Shown piece after piece: positions 4,101 through 64,000 of a DNA stretch of 64,000 bases. The DNA is taken from positions 60,140,001-60,204,000 of the forward strand of contig NC_092346.1 in NCBI RefSeq assembly GCF_963676685.1, read 5' to 3'. Source of the stretch: Mytilus edulis (taxonomy: Eukaryota). The notes below the pieces were generated by a model. The model did no database searches. It was given only the letters and a program-made list of their open reading frames with translations, and had not been told where the DNA came from. The position numbers were made by a program, and so were the translations under genes. Position 1 is the stretch's first letter. The number at the start of each line of letters is the position of its first letter.

Positions 4101-5378
4101 TGTTATTTTTTTTGTTGAAATCAGGACTCTACAGTACAATTTAATTTATATCCAGGCTTCACAGTGAACATTGTCTACTACTCATAGTCAAAGCCATAAA
4201 AAAAAATGGAATGCAATACTAGACTTTATCCACTGTTTAAATCCCGAATAACACATACAATATTGGATAATTTGACAGTTGTGTACATACATCAACCATA
4301 TTAGTCGGGAGGACTGCATAGCAATTTCAATAAACAAATTGACTAAAATCCTTAGATGAAATACTAATCTCAAAAAAACATAAGCTAAAAAGGCGCATTG
4401 TCGTTGCGCTAATTTAAAAAAAAATCCAATCTTTCATTTGCATCACAAGGTTATATTTTATTTGCACCAAAAAATAAAAAAACTTCATTTGCGCCATTTT
4501 ACATGTATTGTATAAAGGAAAAGTTCAATATTCATTGCCCTATCGTAAATGACATTTGTGTTTACAATATTCCCCCTGGAGAATTGAAGGAGTTAATACA
4601 CATTTCTAATACATAACTGAGAGTCACTAAGTTTGGAATTATATAATTAATTTAAGGTGTCAAGATGAATATTGTCAATTCAGAGACAAAAAGAACAAAA
4701 TAAGTCTGTAATTTAGAACGGACACATATATGTTCTGAAAAATGCAGACAAGTCGTTAAAATGTACCAAAAATACTTGCAAAGCCAAATTACAACTTTTT
4801 TTTATCAAAACTTTGAATCAAAATCTTATTTTCAAATAAAACAGAGAATTAATTAACTAATATATTTAAACCATAGTATATTAGTTTTCTCTTCTTATTT
4901 TTAACATTTGTCATTTTGGGACCTTTAATATCGACAATACGATAAGGGCTTTGTTCATTGTTGAAGGTCATACGAAGACCTATAGTTGTTAATTTATATG
5001 TCATTTTGTTCCTTGTGGAGAATTGTTTCATTTTTTATGGCATTTATATTTATGGGGTTCGTGTTGTTTATTCTTTAGTTTTCTATGTTGTGTCATGTGT
5101 ACTATTGTTTTTCTGTTTGTCTTTTTCATTTTTAGCCATGGCGTTGTCAGTTTGTTTTAGATTTATGAGTTTGACTGTCCCTTTGGTATCTTTCGTTGCT
5201 CTTTTATAACACATATGTTTAAATCAGTTTTAATAGATTTACTTTTTTTTAGGGCAAACACGTATAATTCTTCATTTGTCCTCTTTGTGTATACCCTGTA
5301 ATATATCAACAAATATTTTGGACACAGTTTTCTGGGGGAATAGAAGAAAACAACAAATGACTTTAAAAATGCTTCCTT

Positions 5379-52000: not shown

Positions 52001-55000
52001 AAATTATTATGTTGCAGAAAAATACGATGTTAAGACAAGTCTAGAGTTTTCGTCGTTGATTCTTGGGGTTAAATAAAAAATCTATGAAGCATGCAAAGTA
52101 GATCACGGTAATTAAAATGTTCTTAAGATATGGAAACTGCAACAGTCGACATGATTGTCGGTTTCTGAGAAGAAGCTCATGAAAAAATCAACCAAGCTGA
52201 GGGGCATCCATCATGCACATGATAAAACGGGCAAACAAATTAATTCTTAAATTGGCACTAGCAACGAGATTTATAAAAAGTCTAAATATAATTTTTTTTT
52301 TTCAATCATTGATGAAAGTGAAATAGTGAAATAATTCGCTATTATCAGCCAGTATGGTTCAATCTTGTCAAAATAAGCTAAGAAACATTGATGATGAATT
52401 ATTCACTTGCAAGTGAATAATTTGACCTCATTGAATCCGTATTCATGTGAACTTTGATTTAACCCCTTAGCTAGATATATATAACGCATGAATTGTGCGT
52501 GTTCAGTTATTTAAAAGGAAAGACTGTCAACATTGAAAGTGAAACAAATGTACATCATTTGAATGAATGATTCGATCCCCAAAAAATCATTCCTATACAG
52601 GTCAAGACGACGATTAACATATATGTTTAACTATAATTAGAAATTAAACAAACCTATAAAATTCCTATTGCACGAGTTCGCTATCTATTTATATCTATAT
52701 GTGTGTTAATTTCGCCTATATGACCATAGGAGGTCTTTGGATAGTCATTTTTTTAGTTAATTATATGGCGCCTAAACTAAATACACACAAAACGAAGCTA
52801 CATAATTATTATCAACCCCATGCCCTGTAAATGGTTTATTTTATACTTTTAATATTTTTGATAAATGTTTTACATTGTTATAAGTCAAATATGAGAATTT
52901 GAGTCAAATCGGTGAACATGAATTCGACAACTGGTGCCCCTTTAACGGCGAATCTATATTCGATCCATGTGGAATAAAATGTTGATACTGTCAAAGACTG
53001 AAATTTCTGTATTTTTTTTATTTTGTCCGCTGTGTGTGCCTCCTGTGAAGAATAAACCCGTTTAGTAAGTTTTACCCAAAAAAAGCAATTTAGAATATTA
53101 AAAATCAACGGTTATCTTAAGAAATAGAAATTAGTGGATGAATTTGGAGATCAACGTCAAACGTAAACGGGCTGCACACAGACGAGATAACCGCAAAACA
53201 AAAGCAGTTTTTTTTAACAAAACTGTGGACCATGTTTATATTGAATCCCTAGACAGAAATATTTTTTATATTTGGGGTGGGGGCAACCATTATCTATCCA
53301 AACAAATGTTATAGATTATGAAAATTTCACTAACTCAGATTAAAAAAATAAACAATGCATATTTCAAAGGTCATGTATTCGTGGTCTACATGATGAAATG
53401 CAAAAAATAGTGAAGTTATTCTGTATTACTTGTTATATTGGTAATACTATGTCTATGATAAAATTGTAGTATTTTGGTAAGATTAAAAAAACAGGTTAAA
53501 CTTAATGCAAGCTGAAGTACATCAATATTTGAAATCAAGTGGATGTATGCGTGTCAACTTTTTAAAAATCTACAAATACTACCAATTTCCGTCTTAGAGC
53601 AGGAATGGGAATAAATCTGGTACATGATTGGTAAAAGGATGTTTTTCCAAAATTAATAGATTTAATTTCAAATATCAATCACAACTTAAAGTAGAATACT
53701 TTATTTATGTCAGAATAAAACGCACTGTTTACCTTGGTGCCAAGGTACTGTTGTAGCTTCATTTTGAGGAGTCTTTGTTCGTAAATTCCACACAGGATGT
53801 CCTGCTATTTCGGGTCCAATTAACTGTTCCACCACGTTTAACATTCGTTCATTACTCCATAAGTCTTTGAATGCCTATAAAGAGGATTAAGTTTTCAATG
53901 TAATTAAGATATAGATCTCTAATTTCGTTATGCTTATATGAATACATGAGTTCCGATAGATCTGAATATTAATCGGAGAGATAAAGGTTTTACTAGGTTG
54001 TTTATAGAGAAAAATTGCTCATCCTTGTTTACTTCTTTAGTAGCTCGATTTATGGTATCATGCAACAATTTACAATTACAACTTTTCCTTAATCGTAATG
54101 CAAATTAATCAATACTGCACTAAAAGTAGTTTATAAATGCATCATCATACACATGTGCATGTACATGGTTTAGTAGTTATTTTGATAAGTATGTTGTTTC
54201 CATTTCAGTTCTAAGCTTATGTCGTTGAACTGAACTTGGAGACGGTGACCTTTAAATTTATAAGATGTTGCTCTTGTTGTTACTCATTCGGGACTTAACA
54301 AAGTACGTAAAAACAAAGTTCAATAAACTGGTCTATAGCGCTGGGTACTGTACAGGCGGTGTTGTATCGATATCATAATAGCATGAGCAAAGACAATTAT
54401 AAAACATCTAATGTGTAGCTAGCTATTAATTAAACCAGGTTTAATTCACCGTTTTCTACATGAGTAAATGCCTGTACCAAGTCAGGAATTTGACAGTTGT
54501 TATCTATTCGTTTGATGTGTTTGAGCTTTTGATTTTGCCATTTGATTAGGGACTTTCGGTTTTGAATTTTCCTCGGAGTTCAGTATTTTTGTGATTTTAC
54601 TTTTTATATCCCTATGTTCTATATACAGCTATGTATACAAAGCTACATAGTATCGAGCCTTTTTGTCGATTTTTAAAACGAGTTCTCAAACAGTTAGTCT
54701 TTAAAATCTTATAGAGTTTTGGGGCTTGAGTACATTCCAAGCTGATTTTAATAATTGCGAATAAAAATATATACTTTGGTCTTATTTATTGTAATTAAAC
54801 TTACAATTCATTCCATTCTTCGAATCTTTACATAAAAACCCACAATATTGAAACTCACCTGGGCTAACTGGTCTCCTTTGTGAAGAAGAATATTGGCCCC
54901 TGGAAAATCTTTTTCAATGGCAGTCAGTCGTTCAAAGAATCCGAGTTCTCGATATAAACCTGAAATCACATAAGGATAACTATTACTATTTGTTTTATTT

Positions 55001-56145
55001 AATTGCCCAGCACTCTCTCTCTCTCTCACACGGCCATACATATACTAAATGACAATTAGAAATTAAATGTTATGAAAATATCGTCAATTGAGCTTTGTTG
55101 TTTGTACTTGTTGGTTATGATGATGAAATATCTGATATATTGGTTAGCACATCTTTACTGGATTTTCATACTTATTTGAAATAACATTAACGATTAAAGT
55201 TCTACGCCAGATGCATGCGTATTTCGACAATAAATGTGACTTCAGTGATGCTCGAGGCCAAAACGTTAGAAAACCATAGCTTATCAATCAGATGAAGAGT
55301 TATAACCAAATAGGACCAAAAAAATATTAGCTAAAGGTGGGAAAGGAATCAGAACTTTGCAAGAAGGAGAATTATTCCTTAATATGAAATAATTTCCAAA
55401 ATTTTGTAAAACCACTACAAAAAAAGCCGTACTTTCATGAAAGACATCTATGGTTATGGAAGGACTTAGTCTATTTAACAAAACCCAGTACATACTTTTA
55501 ATGCGCTTGGTGTTGTACAGTTTTTGTGCCAACTCTTCTACTAGTTCATTAACAGCATCTCTGCATGGATCTATTTCATCCCTATTGAAAAATTTCTCCA
55601 CGATGACGTACCCCTGAAAAATTAAAACAACTTTCAATCAAAACACGAAGTGATCTATGACAGGCGATAACGTTAAAATGGGGGGGAAATCATGGCATTT
55701 CGAGACTTGTCTTCTTTTATTCCCTTTTCAAATTTGTAATGATATCGAAATAAAATAACATTGAAATATTTTGTTTTAGAATATAATTATCATTTATCTA
55801 AGCATGAAATCTATAACAAAAGTTTTCACCATTATGTTGACATATAACGTGTTACCTCATTCTACAAATTATAGTTTTCGTAAAGCGCTTTTTTTTAAAA
55901 TTATTATTATGAATGTTTGGCGTATCAGATCAAAACCACCAAAATTGACAACCAAATCTAATTGAGTTCCGTGTAATGTTTATAAAATAATATTTTCATT
56001 TTGTACTTACATCTTCAAAGAATTGTTTAATTTCGTCATCTGAGAGCTGTCCTAGTTTCTGAGTTGTAATTTTCGGTCTTGCATTCGAATTGAAATAATC
56101 CGGAAAAGTTTCCCCGGTATATCCGTGAGGGACTGTCGGCGGCAT
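49081..56145 (-). CDS. Phytanoyl-CoA dioxygenase (PhyH) family Fe(II)/2OG oxygenase, 9 coding exons, 372 aa
   Basis: Exons 56145-56011, 55613-55496, 54959-54859, 53874-53733, 51801-51707, 51168-51063, 50525-50441, 49986-49785 and 49215-49081 are all GT-AG, phase-consistent and total 1119 nt. Motifs: FFEDGYVIVE, VPWHQD (HxD), TAWIPLLDANEKNGCM, NNLIPHRSLPN (distal His), IRWSLDLRW (2OG-binding Arg). Confidence 0.92.
50114..50158 (-). ncRNA. Intronic hammerhead motif with mutated core (CUGGUGA) in a retrozyme-like fragment (~50078-50330)
   Basis: Reverse complement GCGTCA-CTGGTGA-GTCTTTTGTAGAC-GAAA-CGCGCGTC-TGGCGT, in PhyH intron 7, sense orientation. Confidence 0.65.
52251..52941. mobile_element. 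Non-autonomous TTAA-targeting TIR element (Kolobok-like) in PhyH intron 4
   Basis: TTAA|ATTGGCACTAGC...ACTGGTGCCCCT|TTAA. An inverted partial copy at ~56790-57107 ends GCTAGTGCCCC. Confidence 0.6.
54420..54605 (-). repeat. Abundant dispersed repeat (AAAAGTAAAATCACAAAAATACTGAACTCCGAGGAAAATTCAAAAC family)
   Basis: Related copies at ~1275-1360, ~6625-6760, ~16740-16965, ~21040-21155, ~43430-43600 and ~44560-44740. Confidence 0.7.
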
Positions 56146-57671
56146 GGTCTATATGAACTCAAAGAATGTGTTAAAGGACCTACTTAATGATACAAGTAAT
56201 ACTACTTTTGGTGGCCAAGGTCAAATATTTATCTGTTATCTTAATCATATACAAATTTATAAAGTTGCTTGTATAGTTGATAACATGTAGATAATAATTT
56301 GATAACATGTAGATAAAATTTTTATACAATTTATAGGAAACAGAGGTGTTATTGTCTCTTGTTGCTGGCATAAGTCACTGTGACTATAAAAAAAATAGTA
56401 TGATTTAAAAAGTATAAAATAAACAATTTACAGGGCATGGGCTCGATAATATGCAACTTCGTTTCGTGTGTATTTTAGTCTAGACGCAATATCATGAATT
56501 TACTATTGAGTTGTGGGCCTCCGAAAACCTCCGATGGTCATATAAATGATAAAAACATAAACAAGGCTCCGTGTTGAAGACCGTACCTTGACCTTTAATG
56601 GTTTACTTTTATAAATTATGATTTGGATGCAGATTTGTCTCATTGGCACTCATACCACATCTTCCTATATCTTTAAAGAGAATTGGACTCGTGCAATTTG
56701 ATTTTTCTAGTTCTGTTTAACTTCATAATATAGATTAAAACTACATGTTAATCAGCGTTTTACCTCCATAACAATGATGTTTTGTCGATCGAATCAGCCA
56801 ATCAAATGATTTACCTTTGTTTCACTTTCAATGTTGACATACTTTACCTTAAAATAACTCAACACGCACAATGCATGCGTTATCAATCTCTAGCTAAGGA
56901 GTGAAATTGAAGTTCACATGAATACTGATCTAATGAGGTCGAATTATTCACTAGCATTTGATGTTTTTAGCTTATTTTGACAAAATTAAACCATCTTGAC
57001 AGCCGCTAAAAGCGAATTATTATTTCACTCTTTGCAAGTTTCATTAATGATTGAACAAAACAAATCATATTCTAAATTTGTAAATATTTCTCGTAGCTAG
57101 TGCCCCATTTAAATTATTTCAACTGTCATACTTTCTAGCTCACCTTGCCCAAATGAAATGAGTTAACAGAAAACAAAGAGGTATACCACATATTAAAACA
57201 TGATAAACTGATACAAACTATGATACATTAATACCATTGTATTTTTTATATAATGGTTTATGTATAATGAAATATGTAATCACTTCATGTTAACGCACGG
57301 AAAAATAAACTAAAATTGTAAGTGGTTAGACATTCATACATGTCAGATCATGTCAGGTAGAACGTACTTGGTCAGATCACATTCACAGAACATTTGTTTT
57401 GCCCTCCCCCTTTTCCGTATTCTTGGTATTTTTTTAATTTCTAGGTGTATATCTTAGATACCTGTAACACTATGTTACAATGTCTAATGAATACCAACAA
57501 TATTAATTCATGCTTTTATTCCTCAGAAATTTATAAAATGACAAATCAGACGTGCGTTGTTTGTTTGAGTGACACGGAATTGACTTTCGTCTTTTCCGAT
57601 GATGGGTCTTTATTATATTTTGAAAACTGATTATCTCCCTTATACAGAAGAAAAGAAATGAACAGCTGAGC

Positions 57672-58124
57672 AGGCCCGAGACCACAATTAATTCCTCTAT
57701 TAGTTCTTTATAATGTTTTGTCTCATTAAAAAAAATTGACCTATTCTTTTTGGCAGATCTTTTGTGTGTGTAATGTACAGTACAAGTCCAAAAATATGTC
57801 CAAGTTTCAGAAAAATTGCACATATACAACTTACAAATTTAGCCAATACACATCCATACCCCTATGGACAAGTCAAGAGATGTTCCGAAAACTGTAAATA
57901 TCACCTTTTTGCACCTGACCTAATCACTCTTTCCATATCAAAATCTGTTAAAATTAAACATCTAAAAATTTATTTCACCTCTCTTCTTTCATTTCCACCT
58001 TATAAAAGCTAAGAAATGTTTGAGAAAAGGAAAGAAAAAAATTTAAGAAGAAATACACTTTAATTAAAGGGAACTATATTCGTGAACAACGAAAAGTGGG
58101 GTCATTAATTGTGGTCTTGGGCCT
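57672..58124 (+). repeat. Left long terminal direct repeat (LTDR 1), 453 bp, with its own TIRs
   Basis: AGGCCCGAGACCACAATTAAT ... ATTAATTGTGGTCTTGGGCCT (20/21 inverted match). I found one difference from LTDRs 2-4 (T at 57946 versus A). Confidence 0.92.
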
Positions 58125-59211
58125 ATTAGACCCTTTTTCTTCAATATAATGCCCCAAAAAATGGCACGCATTAAGTTTATTCTATATCCAACTAGCATAC
58201 CAAATATCAAATCAATCCGACAAGTTTTATGGCAGTTCTGATAGTTTTAATAACACTACCCTCAGGTTGATAATTGTAGGTATTTTCTGGCTTGAAATTA
58301 TAAAAACATGAAACTACTAGGAAAAGTAAAAGTTTAATAACTTTCTTGTTAAACATGATATCTTAAAAAAGTAAAATGTCTATAGTAGCTAAATGGTTAT
58401 ATTTCTAGAATCTGAAAGAAAATTTATAAAAAAATATGTTTTTTCAATTGAAATTAATTTTTTTTTAAATTTTTTTTTTTAATTTAGCTAACATACCAAC
58501 ACTAGATATAAAAAAATCCATTTAAAATATTTAAAAAGAAAATTTACATTCAAAACTTATCTTAAAAAATTGCTTATCTTATCTGTAATAAGTAAAATAT
58601 AACATAAACACTAATTAGTCATAGTTCACAGGTACTTGGCCTATTTACCTGAGGTACCAATATTCAAGTGTAACATCAGGTCAGATTACATGTAAAGACA
58701 ATTTCAAACTTGTGTAATTTCTTTATTCCTTGAAATATTCCTCTAAAATAAACTTTTTAGTGAAGTTTTCTGTTTTGTTTATCCTTATAGATAAAAAGAA
58801 TTTAATTTTCTAACAGATTTCTGTAAAAAAAAACAGTTATTAAAAATTATCCTGAATTTTGAGAAATAAATTATCTAAAACATTAATAAAAAAAATAAAT
58901 ATGCTTCTTTGTTCAATTAATCTCTTAATAAATGATTAAGTAACCTATTTCAATAGATTTGGATAAAACAATCTTTATCTGGACCCCTAATAGTACATTA
59001 ATTGGCTTAGTTGGATACTGCTAAGAAAACTCTGTTAATTCAAAGTTGCCTCTGAAGGTGGTCTCTTGAAATCCATGTCACAGACTGCATCAAAAGAAAA
59101 CATGTACATCAAAGCAGATATCATACAGTGCTTGATTATAAATATAAGGATGTCCAAAGTTTATGCTATCAGTCCAAGTTGTGATATTACGGATCCAGTT
59201 AAATTTTTAAA

Positions 59212-61215
59212 ATGTTCACTAAAGGTTATACCCCATATAGCAAAGGCAAGAAGAGGTCAAAGAAAGACAACTCTCCAAGAAATCCTGGATGGTTCCCTGT
59301 AGGCACAAGTGGTAGAAGCAGGAGCCGGACGCCAATACAGATCCCTGATTCAGCTAGTGCAAGTACTTCCTACGTGCGGCAAACTTTACAATCTCCTGAC
59401 TGTGAAAAGGCTACTGGTCACATCTGTACTCTTCGACCGCAAGCGAATGCTAACCTGAAAATAGAAGAAAACAACGCATTACATTCTGGTATGAGATTGA
59501 TAGACAGTGAACTGACAACCAGCTTGATCAACACTACTTATGATAAACATAAAGTGGAGTCACCATCCTGTCCTAGGATGAATGTGGACTATCATGAACA
59601 GAAAAAGTGGGGAACTTGCTGGCAGTATACCCTGAAATGCAAAACCTGTGGTTTTATTGGAGACAGAATGAAGATGTATAAAGAAATAGCTAATGGCAAA
59701 CCAGGACCCAACCCAGGACAACCAAATGTAGCCCTTGCATCTGCTTTGCAGGATTGCCCAATTGGTAATACCACGGTGCAGCAACTACTTGCAGGAGTTG
59801 ACACACCACCACCATGCCGAAGCAGTATGCAACGCACATCTAACAGAGTAGCAGCTGAAATGGTCAATCTCAACAAAACAGACATGGCACAGAAACTTGA
59901 ACTAGTAAAAGAAGAGAACAGAAAGAGAGGTGTACCAGAAAATGAAATCAACATAACTGTGGATGCTAGATACAACAGCAATACAATTGTTAGTAAAAAG
60001 AAGCCGGGTCAGAATGCCACTCAAGCATTCGCACTTGGTATTGAAACAATGACAGACAGAAAGTTTATTGTAGCTGCAGTTGTGCAGAACAAGATGTGCT
60101 GGAGAGGGGCTTGGCTTAGAGGGAAAGGCTTTCCAATAGAATGTCCTGGTCATGAAGAATGTACTTCAAATTTATACAGAGCTGCTGCCCTGTCAGAGTA
60201 TGAGCTGGGAAAAGAGATGGGGAACCAGCTAGGACTACAGAAATTTCTTGTACGGTATGTGACCACAGATGGAGATGGACGTTCAGCTAGAGGTATTGAA
60301 GATGCTATTAAAGCTCTGGAACCAATGTGGGAGGTAGAAAGACTAGCAGATCCAGTACATTTGGGGCAGTCTCAATTCAGGGCCTCTAATCGTGCTCAAT
60401 ACAGTGCGGGAATGTTCCATGGTAAAACAAAAGAAGAAAATAGACAACTAAAGACAGTGTTTAGCAAAGATATTAAGTGCAGATGCTCCATGATAATTAA
60501 TAAACTGATGGAAAAGTACGACAAAAACATTCACGATATGAGTAAAGACTTACCAAAAGTTCTAGATGCAACTCTTCGCTGCTATGATGGTGACTGCACC
60601 CTGTGTCAGGAACATTCCATTGTCTGCAAAGGTGATGCTGCACTTAACTGGTGGAGTCGTTCCCATTACTTGTCCACATACCAAATCACTGCCCTGCAAA
60701 TGGATAAAACAGACAAATTTTTACTACAAGAAATCCTGAAAATGAAACTAACAAAAGCAGCTGTTAAAAGTATGAAACTGTATGATAATACAAATAAAAA
60801 TGAAGGAGTTCACAGAGCAATGAGTGTAAATTTGCCAAAAAATGTAATTTACTCCAAAAATATGGAAGGACGACTTGCCTCAGGAGTGCATCGAAATAAC
60901 AATATGCCAGGAACTTCAACCCAACTGAAATGTAAGAATTTAGGAGTAGACCTTTCAACTAGAAGTCAACTTTACCTGAAGAAAATGGACACCAACTTCA
61001 AATACAGTCAGGATTATGAACTGAGACCAGCAGTTCAAGAAAGGAGATTACAGCAGAGTGCAGAAAAGTTAGCCGAGCACAAAACATGGAGGGAAATGAA
61101 TAAAAAGCACGATTATTACTGCAAAGACCAATTAGATCCACAACCTGCCTTACATTTCCAGGACCATGACAGCTACTGTAAACCGAAGCTCAATCCAAGA
61201 CCTGCTGCTGACTGA
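59212..61215 (+). CDS. Kolobok-type ('Mutator-like' domain) DDD/E transposase, 667 aa
   Basis: Uninterrupted ORF with a CxxC zinc motif (CKTCG) and candidate catalytic residues D251 (ITVDARYNS), D353 (TTDGD) and E531 (TNKNEGVH), plus a DxxH motif (D380-H383). Confidence 0.88.
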   Translation: MFTKGYTPYSKGKKRSKKDNSPRNPGWFPVGTSGRSRSRTPIQIPDSASASTSYVRQTLQSPDCEKATGHICTLRPQANANLKIEENNALHSGMRLIDSELTTSLINTTYDKHKVESPSCPRMNVDYHEQKKWGTCWQYTLKCKTCGFIGDRMKMYKEIANGKPGPNPGQPNVALASALQDCPIGNTTVQQLLAGVDTPPPCRSSMQRTSNRVAAEMVNLNKTDMAQKLELVKEENRKRGVPENEINITVDARYNSNTIVSKKKPGQNATQAFALGIETMTDRKFIVAAVVQNKMCWRGAWLRGKGFPIECPGHEECTSNLYRAAALSEYELGKEMGNQLGLQKFLVRYVTTDGDGRSARGIEDAIKALEPMWEVERLADPVHLGQSQFRASNRAQYSAGMFHGKTKEENRQLKTVFSKDIKCRCSMIINKLMEKYDKNIHDMSKDLPKVLDATLRCYDGDCTLCQEHSIVCKGDAALNWWSRSHYLSTYQITALQMDKTDKFLLQEILKMKLTKAAVKSMKLYDNTNKNEGVHRAMSVNLPKNVIYSKNMEGRLASGVHRNNNMPGTSTQLKCKNLGVDLSTRSQLYLKKMDTNFKYSQDYELRPAVQERRLQQSAEKLAEHKTWREMNKKHDYYCKDQLDPQPALHFQDHDSYCKPKLNPRPAAD

Positions 61216-61348
61216 GATACCAGCTGATCCACCTAAAGACCAACAGCAAACAGAATCATAAAAGGTCCTTTTAAGGGCCACACAAATATTAAAAAAAGAA
61301 TCTGAATTTGTTGTACATCAGTCTTGAAATTTCTTTTCTTTTTCTCCC

Positions 61349-61813
61349 TCATTTCAATTTTTTTGCCAGCCCTTCCCTTGGATAGTTATAAAAATAAATG
61401 TACCCAATTAATATTTTACCCAAATTATTATTATCCATTTTCAACTCCACTCTACAGGGAGGGAGGGGTTCTGGGTGGCCCAAGCAGGAACAGGTTGAAA
61501 CGCATGACTGTCGGCTGTTGTTGAAGCCATGAGGTTCCAACGACAGATGCCCGACAGTAATACATTTAGAATTGTGGCACAGGTGCGAAACATCATAAGA
61601 TTTATCAATAAAAATATTCTGATGATGCACCATGTAGGCAAGCCTGTGCACATGCATTTGTCTCCACCCTCTGGCATCTGGAAATTTACAATTTATAACC
61701 CCATATTTGCCATTAGGTGTACATAAACCTGTCCAAATTTGACACTGCCCATTATAGCCAGGTGCAGAGCTATCATTCAGTTTTTGTCTATATTTTTGTA
61801 AAAATGCATCCAT
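61349..61813 (-). CDS. His-Me finger (His-Cys box homing-endonuclease-like) nuclease, 154 aa
   Basis: CQIWTG...YG...VHRLAY...DVSHLCHNSKC...HL...NNSR..C...C.GH....PC. This is the I-PpoI-like zinc-binding/His-Me pattern, with candidate catalytic H77 and metal-binding N98. Confidence 0.88.
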   Translation of the reverse strand: MDAFLQKYRQKLNDSSAPGYNGQCQIWTGLCTPNGKYGVINCKFPDARGWRQMHVHRLAYMVHHQNIFIDKSYDVSHLCHNSKCITVGHLSLEPHGFNNSRQSCVSTCSCLGHPEPLPPCRVELKMDNNNLGKILIGYIYFYNYPREGLAKKLK

Positions 61814-62089
61814 TTTGAAGATATTGTTTTAGAAAGACATAAGAGTAGTAATATATTCTAAAAATAAAAAGGGGTCCAACAGAATTGACAGAAAGGGCTG
61901 AAACAGGGGTCAAAGGTTTTTCAGTGCATCAAAATGGCCAAAAATACCCCCAAAGTGCCCATTATCCCAGAATCATGATATATATAAGTTAAAAATACAA
62001 TAATCAACTAGTATTTATCATTTGAAGTGACTTTCTGCCAATAAAGTTGGTCAATTCTTTATTTTCAAGATTTTGGGAATCAGCCTCTT

Positions 62090-63464
62090 AGGCCCGAGAC
62101 CACAATTAATTCCTCTATTAGTTCTTTATAATGTTTTGTCTCATTAAAAAAAATTGACCTATTCTTTTTGGCAGATCTTTTGTGTGTGTAATGTACAGTA
62201 CAAGTCCAAAAATATGTCCAAGTTTCAGAAAAATTGCACATATACAACTTACAAATTTAGCCAATACACATCCATACCCCTATGGACAAGTCAAGAGATG
62301 TTCCGAAAACTGTAAATATCACCTTTTTGCACCTGACCTAATCACTCTTTCCATATCAAAATCAGTTAAAATTAAACATCTAAAAATTTATTTCACCTCT
62401 CTTCTTTCATTTCCACCTTATAAAAGCTAAGAAATGTTTGAGAAAAGGAAAGAAAAAAATTTAAGAAGAAATACACTTTAATTAAAGGGAACTATATTCG
62501 TGAACAACGAAAAGTGGGGTCATTAATTGTGGTCTTGGGCCTATTATCTTAGGCCCGAGACCACAATTAATTCCTCTATTAGTTCTTTATAATGTTTTGT
62601 CTCATTAAAAAAAATTGACCTATTCTTTTTGGCAGATCTTTTGTGTGTGTAATGTACAGTACAAGTCCAAAAATATGTCCAAGTTTCAGAAAAATTGCAC
62701 ATATACAACTTACAAATTTAGCCAATACACATCCATACCCCTATGGACAAGTCAAGAGATGTTCCGAAAACTGTAAATATCACCTTTTTGCACCTGACCT
62801 AATCACTCTTTCCATATCAAAATCAGTTAAAATTAAACATCTAAAAATTTATTTCACCTCTCTTCTTTCATTTCCACCTTATAAAAGCTAAGAAATGTTT
62901 GAGAAAAGGAAAGAAAAAAATTTAAGAAGAAATACACTTTAATTAAAGGGAACTATATTCGTGAACAACGAAAAGTGGGGTCATTAATTGTGGTCTTGGG
63001 CCTATTATCTTAGGCCCGAGACCACAATTAATTCCTCTATTAGTTCTTTATAATGTTTTGTCTCATTAAAAAAAATTGACCTATTCTTTTTGGCAGATCT
63101 TTTGTGTGTGTAATGTACAGTACAAGTCCAAAAATATGTCCAAGTTTCAGAAAAATTGCACATATACAACTTACAAATTTAGCCAATACACATCCATACC
63201 CCTATGGACAAGTCAAGAGATGTTCCGAAAACTGTAAATATCACCTTTTTGCACCTGACCTAATCACTCTTTCCATATCAAAATCAGTTAAAATTAAACA
63301 TCTAAAAATTTATTTCACCTCTCTTCTTTCATTTCCACCTTATAAAAGCTAAGAAATGTTTGAGAAAAGGAAAGAAAAAAATTTAAGAAGAAATACACTT
63401 TAATTAAAGGGAACTATATTCGTGAACAACGAAAAGTGGGGTCATTAATTGTGGTCTTGGGCCT
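62090..63464 (+). repeat. Tandem array of three LTDRs (62090-62542, 62551-63003, 63012-63464; period 461 bp)
   Basis: Apparently identical 453-bp units separated by the 8-bp spacer ATTATCTT. Confidence 0.93.
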
Positions 63465-64000
63465 ATTAGACCCTTTTTCTTCAATATAATGCCCCAAAAA
63501 ATGGCACGCATTAAGTTTATTCTATATCCAACTAGCATACCAAATATCAAATCAATCCGACAAGTTTTATGGCAGTTCTGATAGTTTTAATAACACTACC
63601 CTCAGGTTGATAATTGTAGGTATTTTCTGGCTTGAAATTATAAAAACATGAAACTACTAGGAAAAGTAAAAGTTTAATAACTTTCTTGTTAAACATGATA
63701 TCTTAAAAAAGTAAAATGTCTATAGTAGCTAAATGGTTATATTTCTAGAATCTGAAAGAAAATTTATAAAAAAATATGTTTTTTCAATTGAAATTAATTT
63801 TTTTTTAAATTTTTTTTTTTAATTTAGCTAACATACCAACACTAGATATAAAAAAATCCATTTAAAATATTTAAAAAGAAAATTTACATTCAAAACTTAT
63901 CTTAAAAAATTGCTTATCTTATCTGTAATAAGTAAAATATAACATAAACACTAATTAGTCATAGTTCACAGGTACTTGGCCTATTTACCTGAGGTACCAA
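63012..64000 (+). mobile_element. Start of a second, tandem copy of the KolobokP-type element (runs off the window)
   Basis: 63465-64000 matches 58125-58660 (offset 5340 bp), with no difference seen. Confidence 0.88.

What the first reader, a model, noticed from the sequence alone, without database searches (positions are those of the whole stretch)
62086..63468. LTDR trimer whose 8-bp spacers are exactly the two 4-bp ends of the internal region (ATTA + TCTT)
Seen: INT begins ATTA (58125-58128 and again 63465-63468) and ends TCTT (62086-62089). Both LTDR-LTDR junctions read CCT|ATTA-TCTT|AGG, so the repeating 461-bp unit is TCTT-LTDR-ATTA. Inference: simple homologous recombination between LTDRs would not create this junction. 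It looks like a transposase footprint, with 4-nt staggered cuts outside the TIRs (matching the 4-bp TSD length of Kolobok), fill-in and end joining. That could happen by precise INT excision or by circularisation and re-integration of an INT-flanked LTDR, followed by amplification. It records the cleavage geometry and shows a route from a transposon end to a new 461-bp satellite.
Basis: partly seen in the sequence, partly recalled or inferred. Interest (0 to 1): 0.8.

Follow-up and report, generated by a model that had tools for sequence, protein, structure and literature searches.

The report
Tandem end-repeats in a KolobokP transposon
Three identical end-repeats of a known mussel DNA transposon (KolobokP) lie head to tail because the 4-kb gene-carrying middle was cut out cleanly once, leaving a rare 10-base scar found at no other locus in this genome.

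Summary

The element is not new. It is a KolobokP composite transposon (Kojima & Bao 2022), of the Mytilus family KolobokP-4_MyGa / 1_MyCo / 6_MyEd. It carries a Kolobok DDE transposase and a His-Me nuclease.

The whole array, LTDR-INT-LTDRx3-INT-LTDRx2 (10.7 kb), lies between one 4-bp TSD (AGCA). Thirteen clean TSD pairs put the true tips at GGCC...GGCC, giving a 451-bp LTDR. The spacer is therefore 5+5 nt (TATTA+TCTTA), not 4+4.

- The double spacer occurs only at this locus: 3 junctions, most simply one event.
- The other 7 abutted-LTDR junctions carry a single TCTTA.
- A second KolobokP family carries a single TTAA rather than TTAATTAA.
- The reciprocal INT-INT junctions (278) also carry one linker.

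Best reading: one precise break-and-join loss of the INT core kept both linkers, and unequal crossover then amplified it. A nuclease or transposase footprint is plausible but rests on that single event. Abutted LTDRs appear to be undescribed for KolobokP. This is a modest new variant of a known kind.

The parts
57669..57672 (.). Left copy of the 4-bp target-site duplication AGCA. The right copy lies outside the window at G000:C3:60208343-60208346.
   Evidence: Flanks ...GCTGAGCA|GGCCC and GGGCC|AGCAACAG.
57673..58123 (+). LTDR1, 451 bp with tips GGCCCGAG...CTTGGGCC. It differs from LTDR2-6 at one base (57946).
58124..58128 (+). Linker TATTA (first 5 nt of the published INT), present after nearly every internal LTDR of the family.
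58129..62085 (+). INT core (3957 bp, GACCC...CAGCC), the segment missing at the LTDR-LTDR junctions.
59212..61215 (+). Kolobok DDD/E transposase ORF, 667 aa.
   Evidence: Pfam PF20700, E 2.6e-65.
61349..61813 (-). His-Me finger (His-Cys box, I-PpoI-like) nuclease ORF, 154 aa, on the opposite strand.
   Evidence: Pfam PF05551, E 5e-11. This arrangement is described for KolobokP.
62086..62090 (+). Linker TCTTA (last 5 nt of the published INT), present before nearly every internal LTDR.
62091..62541 (+). LTDR2.
62542..62551 (+).
62552..63002 (+). LTDR3, identical to LTDR2.
63003..63012 (+). Second double-linker spacer TATTATCTTA.
63013..63463 (+). LTDR4, identical to LTDR2.
63464..63468 (+). Linker TATTA before the second INT.
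63469..64000 (+). Start of the second INT core. The whole second INT (3967 bp with linkers) is identical to the first and runs on past the window end, followed by LTDR5, TATTATCTTA and LTDR6.

Best explanation
The region is the middle of a young KolobokP multimer, LTDR-INT-LTDRx3-INT-LTDRx2, inserted as one unit with TSD AGCA. In this family every internal LTDR (451 bp, tips GGCC...GGCC) is preceded by TCTTA and followed by TATTA. These are the two TSD-like ends of INT.

The 461-bp unit is one LTDR plus both linkers. It arose when the 3957-bp INT core between two neighbouring LTDRs was removed exactly, by double-strand breaks at the INT-side edge of each linker, and the ends were joined without loss (fill-in or blunt end joining). 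Unequal crossover between identical LTDRs then raised the copy number to 3 and carried the same junction into the next LTDR cluster.

Shown: the anatomy, the tips and TSD, that this junction occurs only at this locus, and the single-linker norm elsewhere.

Inferred: that the breaks were made by the element's own enzymes (transposase bound at the two facing LTDR tips, or the His-Me nuclease at the semi-palindromic tip/linker sites). On this view single-linker junctions are the usual cohesive or strand-transfer outcome, and this double-linker junction is the rare fill-in outcome.
For: Anatomy and perfect identity: (both INTs 0 differences, LTDR2-6 identical, three identical spacers). One TSD around the whole array, and 13 clean 4-bp TSD pairs that fix the tips. 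Membership in KolobokP.

Census of tip-to-tip junctions with 0-30 nt spacers: 3 double (this locus only) and 7 single TCTTA, including an independent subfamily. No 0-nt junctions were found.

Reciprocal INT-INT junctions also carry one linker, TCTTA or TATTA. There are 22 autonomous and 256 non-autonomous junctions, with a rare 8-nt TCTTATTA.

A second family has a single TTAA between abutted LTDRs. Both breakpoints of the deletion lie exactly 5 nt from a tip, the same length as the normal single linker. Random breakage would rarely give that.

The tip/linker boundaries are semi-palindromic 15-mers with 6/7 and 4/7 pairs. The paper anticipates this kind of site for the I-PpoI-like nuclease.
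Against: All three double-linker junctions sit in one array and are most simply one event, so the exactness could be coincidence. No direct evidence for cleavage positions or for circles exists here. The retained length (5) does not equal the TSD (4), so the footprint does not simply mirror integration geometry. Single-linker junctions can also be explained by microhomology (GCCT or TTAG; CCTTAAG in the second family) without any element enzyme. Copy number was not confirmed by long reads.
Confidence: 0.55

Rival explanations
1. One reading: transposase makes 4-nt staggered cuts just outside the TIRs (equal to TSD length), followed by fill-in and end joining. The spacer is therefore always the first 4 plus the last 4 nt of INT, and this is a general route to an LTDR satellite.
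For: The spacer does contain ATTA+TCTT and the TSD is 4 bp. An I-PpoI-type nuclease leaves 4-nt overhangs according to the paper.
Against: The true tips are GGCC...GGCC, so 5+5 nt are retained. 7 of 10 junctions in this family and 4 of 4 in a second family have a single linker. LTDR runs never exceed 3 copies.
Confidence: 0.1
2. An enzyme-independent accident: a spontaneous deletion of INT by ordinary NHEJ or replication slippage whose breakpoints happen to fall 5 nt from each LTDR tip, later amplified by unequal crossover.
For: It is a single event, there is no microhomology at the junction, and deletions inside tandem arrays are common.
Against: Both breakpoints coincide with the linker edges, and the retained length equals the normal linker length in 7 other junctions. 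The chance is roughly (1/20)^2 if breakpoints were free within 20 nt (my estimate).
Confidence: 0.2
3. Circle recapture: an LTDR was excised together with both flanking linkers and closed into a 461-bp circle. The circle then recombined with a chromosomal LTDR by homology, as in the paper's translocatable-unit model, adding LTDR+10 nt units.
For: The paper proposes circular intermediates with spacer nucleotides and recombination into LTDRs. The flanks of the LTDR cluster are unchanged (TCTTA on the left, TATTA on the right), as homologous integration predicts.
Against: The matching donor product, an INT-INT junction with 0-nt spacer, is absent among 278 INT-INT junctions. No circle data are available. 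It needs more steps than an in-situ deletion.
Confidence: 0.12
4. Assembly artefact: the number of identical LTDRs, or the junction itself, was produced by the assembler.
For: The copies are 100% identical, the repeat is high-copy in the genome, and no long-read check was possible.
Against: The same 10-nt spacer occurs at a third junction 4.9 kb downstream. LTDR doublets and triplets with a different spacer occur on other contigs. The whole array (10.7 kb) is shorter than typical long reads. Assemblers do not invent a 5-nt duplication of non-identical linkers.
Confidence: 0.06

Closest known systems
KolobokP composite-like DNA transposons (Kojima & Bao, Mob DNA 2022; PMC9587614), specifically the Mytilus family KolobokP-4_MyGa / KolobokP-1_MyCo / KolobokP-6_MyEd
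   Same: LTDR-INT-LTDR architecture; ~450-bp LTDRs with about 20-bp TIRs; RR...YY tips; 4-bp TSD; transposase plus an opposite-strand His-Me nuclease; solo LTDRs; (LTDR-INT)n multimers; INT-INT junctions that lose one terminal oligomer. The INT start and end strings match the published consensus.
   Different: Directly abutted LTDRs, (LTDR)2-3, were not found in the paper's text or its held supplements by term search. The double-linker 10-nt spacer is a further variant seen only at this locus.
Bacterial IS circle junctions and (IS)2 tandem dimers of copy-out-paste-in families (IS3, IS30, IS256), cited as an analogy in the KolobokP paper
   Same: Two inverted ends lie tip to tip, separated by a few bases taken from the flank of one end. 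The TCTTA junctions and the second family's TTAA junctions fit this picture.
   Different: The spacer is TSD+1 (5 vs 4; 4 vs 3), not the TSD length. At this locus bases from both flanks are kept, which the one-ended strand-transfer model does not predict. There is no evidence here of circles or of junction reactivity. This is a eukaryotic Kolobok transposase.
Cut-and-paste excision footprints that keep both TSD copies, and piggyBac-type excision with TSD-length overhangs on both the element and the donor (established knowledge, recalled, not tested here)
   Same: Two TSD-like oligomers side by side mark where a segment left. A single restored oligomer is the 'precise' outcome.
   Different: The segment that left (the INT core) has no TIRs of its own. 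The tips that face it belong to the neighbouring LTDRs.
Solo LTRs and tandem LTR-INT-LTR-INT-LTR arrays of LTR retrotransposons formed by unequal crossover
   Same: Explains how the arrays here grow and shrink, and how one junction was copied to three places.
   Different: Unequal crossover between repeats cannot create an LTDR-LTDR junction that lacks INT.

Membership tests
KolobokP (Kolobok superfamily) | [quoted passage not shown] | tested here: met
   LTDRs of 451 bp flank a 3967-bp INT.
KolobokP (Kolobok superfamily) | Each LTDR carries its own short TIRs, with termini 5'-RR...YY-3' | tested here: met
   20-21-nt TIRs with 1 mismatch; tips GG...CC.
KolobokP (Kolobok superfamily) | TSD of 3-5 bp (4 bp listed for this Mytilus family) | tested here: met
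   Thirteen clean 4-bp TSD pairs, including AGCA at this locus. Table S1 lists 4.
KolobokP (Kolobok superfamily) | [quoted passage not shown] | tested here: met
   ORF 59212-61215(+) matches PF20700 at E 2.6e-65. ORF 61349-61813(-) matches PF05551 at E 5e-11. No phylogeny was run to place the transposase within Kolobok.
KolobokP (Kolobok superfamily) | Sequence match to a published family consensus | tested here: met
   About 200 nt at the INT start and about 130 nt at the INT end shown in the supplement for KolobokP-4_MyGa-I and 1_MyCo-I match the window. The LTDR start matches the 6_MyEd subfamily. This was compared by eye on the displayed passages, not over full length.
IS-type circle or (IS)2 abutted-end junction (copy-out-paste-in) | Inverted ends tip to tip, with a spacer taken from the flank of ONE end | tested here: not met
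   At this locus the spacer holds 5 nt from both flanks. The feature is met by the 7 TCTTA junctions elsewhere.
IS-type circle or (IS)2 abutted-end junction (copy-out-paste-in) | Spacer length equals TSD length | tested here: not met
   5 nt vs TSD 4 in this family. 4 nt vs TSD 3 in the second family, from 2 TSD pairs.
IS-type circle or (IS)2 abutted-end junction (copy-out-paste-in) | Extrachromosomal circular intermediate exists | not testable with these tools
   Only short-read contigs were available. One contig in run X16 joins INT end to INT start, which fits either an INT-INT tandem or a circle.
Satellite DNA (461-bp monomer) | Long homogeneous tandem arrays at one or more loci | tested here: not met
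   Maximum 3 copies, and only 3 such junctions genome-wide, all in one array.

The most novel reading that the evidence does not exclude
KolobokP modules (LTDR and INT core) are shuffled by a restriction-and-ligation-like process. An element enzyme cuts every tip/linker boundary with a stagger spanning the linker (TSD+1 nt). The candidates are the transposase at facing tips or the I-PpoI-like His-Me nuclease at the semi-palindromic abutted-tip sites. Cohesive rejoining gives the common single-linker LTDR-LTDR and INT-INT junctions. The window's 10-nt spacer is the rare fill-in product, which would make it a genomic record of the cleavage geometry of a eukaryotic transposon-borne homing-type nuclease or transposase.
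Probability: 0.2. Interest if true: 0.6.

Novelty: new variant of a known kind. Interest (0 to 1): 0.38.

Why it matters
KolobokP is the only described eukaryotic DNA-transposon lineage with a composite (IS-like) architecture plus a homing-type nuclease, and its mechanism is unknown. Its describers inferred LTDR excision and a circular intermediate from INT-INT junctions and footprints. The reciprocal product, LTDR tips abutted across a few flank-derived bases, is what that model predicts. It is present in this genome as 10 junctions in this family and 4 in a second family.

The single-linker junctions give the spacer length: 5 nt here and 4 nt in the second family, each TSD+1. The double-linker junction in this window is the one case that a one-ended strand-transfer model does not explain and a two-sided staggered break does. 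That yields concrete substrates and predicted cut sites for biochemical tests.

It does not establish a new satellite or a general rule.

Tried and rejected
1. INT core as a transposon with its own TIRs. Local alignments of its two ends with each other and with the LTDR TIR are no better than shuffles (p 0.21, 0.40, 0.75), whereas LTDR left against right gives p<0.0005. Rejected.

2. Nested transposition of an LTDR next to an existing one. I enumerated every 4-bp-TSD insertion into the L>I or I>L boundary. None reproduces the observed spacers together with the observed outer flanks. A 5-bp TSD exactly on TCTTA would reproduce the single-linker doublet but never the double linker. This was worked through by reasoning on the sequences.

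3. Homologous crossover within the shared core GCC-T(A/C)TTA-G(G/A)CCC. It can give single linkers but not TATTA+TCTTA.

4. Long-read check. Read laying offered only Logan contigs, so neither copy number nor the junction could be assessed.

5. Allelic haplotig or empty site. The left flank is unique in the assembly.

6. Independent data. A scan of metagenome contigs for any abutted-tip junction found nothing.

7. Third family (KolobokP-1_MyGa-like tips). No abutted junction was found. The consensus may not fit this genome, so this is not informative.

Full report
**1. Observation**

Window 62086-63468 is a perfect tandem repeat: period 461, 3.0 copies, 100% matches, score 2766. Direct reading and the repeat finder show four copies of a ~453-bp repeat in the window, starting at 57672, 62090, 62551 and 63012.
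- The first and second are separated by a 3965-bp internal region (INT). The others are separated by 8 bp (ATTATCTT).
- INT starts ATTA at 58125, and again at 63465, and ends TCTT at 62086-62089.

The array continues past the window. The second INT is followed by two more repeats joined by the same spacer, and the array ends at G000:C3:60208342. The two INTs are identical over 3967 bp. LTDR2 to LTDR6 are identical, and LTDR1 differs at one base, 57946.

**2. What the element is**

INT carries two ORFs.
- A 667-aa ORF (59212-61215, +) matches Pfam PF20700 at E 2.6e-65.
- A 154-aa ORF on the opposite strand (61349-61813) matches the His-Me/His-Cys-box homing-endonuclease family PF05551 at E 5e-11.

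A literature search led to Kojima & Bao 2022 (PMC9587614). They describe KolobokP, which has these features:
- LTDR-INT-LTDR architecture, with ~450- or ~660-bp LTDRs that carry their own TIRs;
- RR...YY tips and 3-5-bp TSDs;
- a transposase plus an opposite-strand His-Me nuclease.

The lineage is especially rich in bivalves.

The supplement's consensus KolobokP-4_MyGa-I / KolobokP-1_MyCo-I begins TATTAGACCC... and ends ...GGGAATCAGCCTCTTA, as here. KolobokP-6_MyEd-LTDR is 451 bp and begins like one subfamily in this genome. This is a known family in a Mytilus-type genome.

**3. True tips and TSD**

I used the array here, a monomer on C2, and arrays and solo LTDRs at 20 other loci.
- Thirteen loci have clean 4-bp TSD pairs: AGCA (this locus), AACT, ATCA, AGAT, ATGA, AATA, ATTT, AAAT, TTCT, AAAA, AATA, TATT and TGTT.
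- These appear only if the element is taken as GGCC(C/A)...GGGCC (451 bp).
- Two further pairs are imperfect: TACA/TATA, and a site that reads as a 5-bp TAGTA.

In nearly every internal position of the family the LTDR is preceded by TCTTA and followed by TATTA. This holds for the autonomous INT and for an unrelated ~1.29-kb non-autonomous internal segment. Hybrid arrangements are very rare, with 3 found.

The paper reports the same kind of TSD-like INT termini in other families, for example TATA...TATA. The supplement shows TTAA...TTAA and near-matches in others.

**4.

There are about 2,500 TIR hits, which is roughly 1,250 LTDRs because the two tips differ by one base and both match at one mismatch.

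Tip-to-tip junctions with 0-30 nt between them number 10.
- Three are TATTATCTTA, all in this one array.
- Seven are TCTTA, on C190, C404 (x2), C520 (x2, also a trimer) and C2062. The seventh, on C1272, is an independent case in the GGCCACAG subfamily around the non-autonomous internal segment.
- No junction has a 0-nt spacer.

The reciprocal INT-INT junctions are far commoner.
- Autonomous INT: 22 junctions (13 TCTTA, 9 TATTA).
- Non-autonomous internal segment: 256 junctions. Of the first 100 listed, 65 are TCTTA, 33 are TATTA and 2 are the 8-nt TCTTATTA.
- INT-only arrays of at least 36 units exist.

I also tested a second KolobokP family (657-bp LTDR, tips GGGTGC...GCACCC, TSD 3 from two pairs, INT termini TTAA...TTAA). 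It has four abutted-LTDR junctions with spacer TTAA (x3) or TTCA (x1). That is one terminal tetramer, not two.

The prediction 'spacer = first 4 + last 4 nt of INT at other loci and families' therefore fails. The rule is a single linker, and this locus is the exception.

**5. Mechanism**

*Array growth.* Arrays grow and shrink by unequal crossover between LTDRs. This is the paper's model and it is consistent with one TSD around each array. It explains how one junction came to occupy three positions here.

*Single-linker junctions.* Several routes can explain them:
- one-ended strand transfer a fixed distance outside the partner tip (the IS3/IS256-like model cited in the paper);
- cohesive rejoining of staggered breaks;
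- microhomology (GCCT or TTAG here; CCTTAAG in the second family).

*The double linker.* It cannot come from homologous exchange, from cuts exactly at the tips (which would leave 0 nt), or from any simple nested insertion, all of which I enumerated. It needs breaks at the INT-side edge of both linkers and joining without loss. In other words, the 3957-bp INT core was removed precisely.

*Why the element's own enzymes are my preferred cause.* Both breakpoints lie exactly one linker length (5 nt) from a tip. The boundaries are also semi-palindromic 15-mers (6/7 and 4/7 pairs). The paper suggested such sites for the I-PpoI-like nuclease, which leaves 4-nt overhangs according to the paper.

This step is inferred and rests on a single event. 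The INT core itself has no TIR-like ends, so it is not an independent transposon.

**6. What could not be done**

- The sequencing runs on offer were short-read contigs only, so the 1-3-2 LTDR pattern was not verified by long reads.
- The element is present at 95-100% identity in runs labelled as several organisms. One contig (run X16) joins INT end to INT start through GCCT, which agrees with the INT-INT junctions in the assembly.
- No allelic contig exists in the assembly.
- A metagenome scan found nothing.

**7. Novelty and verdict**

The element, its multimers, the INT-INT junctions and the circle idea are all published. Abutted LTDRs were not found in the paper's text or its held supplements, and only one other paper mentions KolobokP.

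The finding is a real but minor new structural variant of a known transposon lineage. It has some value as a pointer to cleavage geometry.

Noticed in passing
G000:C7:37080791-37125821 (also C9:12.06 Mb, C7:71.26 Mb, C6:12.11 Mb): INT-only tandem arrays of the non-autonomous internal segment (period about 1291 bp, at least 36 units) without any LTDR between units. Linkers TCTTA and TATTA are intermixed within some arrays.
   Followed up: partly
G000:C1:98079442 and G000:C6:12125210 (L057, L058): Two INT-INT junctions with an 8-nt spacer TCTTATTA (both linkers overlapping by TA) and identical flanks on two chromosomes. This looks like the LTDR-loss counterpart of the double linker.
   Followed up: partly
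G000:C7:45159000-45161500 and C6:30470300-30472800 (L063, L064): Isolated LTDR-TTAA-LTDR (or TTCA) dimers of a second KolobokP family (657-bp LTDR), flanked directly by host DNA with 3-bp TSDs (TAT, TTG). These are INT-less LTDR dimers at their own insertion sites. GCACCC-TTAA-GGGTGC is a perfect 16-bp palindrome.
   Followed up: partly
G000:C1:107766000-107775999 (L039): Three LTDR-X-LTDR monomers separated by the same 48-bp host segment, with TSDs AGAT and ATGA. This fits two nearby insertions followed by unequal crossover that also duplicated host DNA.
   Followed up: partly
TSDs at 13 loci: 10 of the 13 clean 4-bp TSDs begin with A, and all are AT-rich but not TTAA. In both families examined the internal linker is one base longer than the TSD (5 vs 4; 4 vs 3).
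   Followed up: no
Read-laying run X16, window about 58121: A public-run contig joins ...TTTCAAGATTTTGGGAATCA to GCCTATTAGACC..., that is INT end to INT start without an LTDR, in a sample labelled as a different organism. This could be an INT-INT tandem or an INT circle.
   Followed up: partly
window 52354-56994: Another element: 203-nt inverted arms (83% complementary) at 52403-52605 and 56759-56961, with further inverted pairs around them, enclosing about 4.2 kb.
   Followed up: no
G000:C477, C520, C404, C72, C24 and other unplaced contigs: Whole unplaced contigs of 20-40 kb consist only of (LTDR-INT)n units of this family at 100% identity (period 4416-4418). These are either large chromosomal arrays or concatemers, and their placement is unknown.
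   Followed up: no
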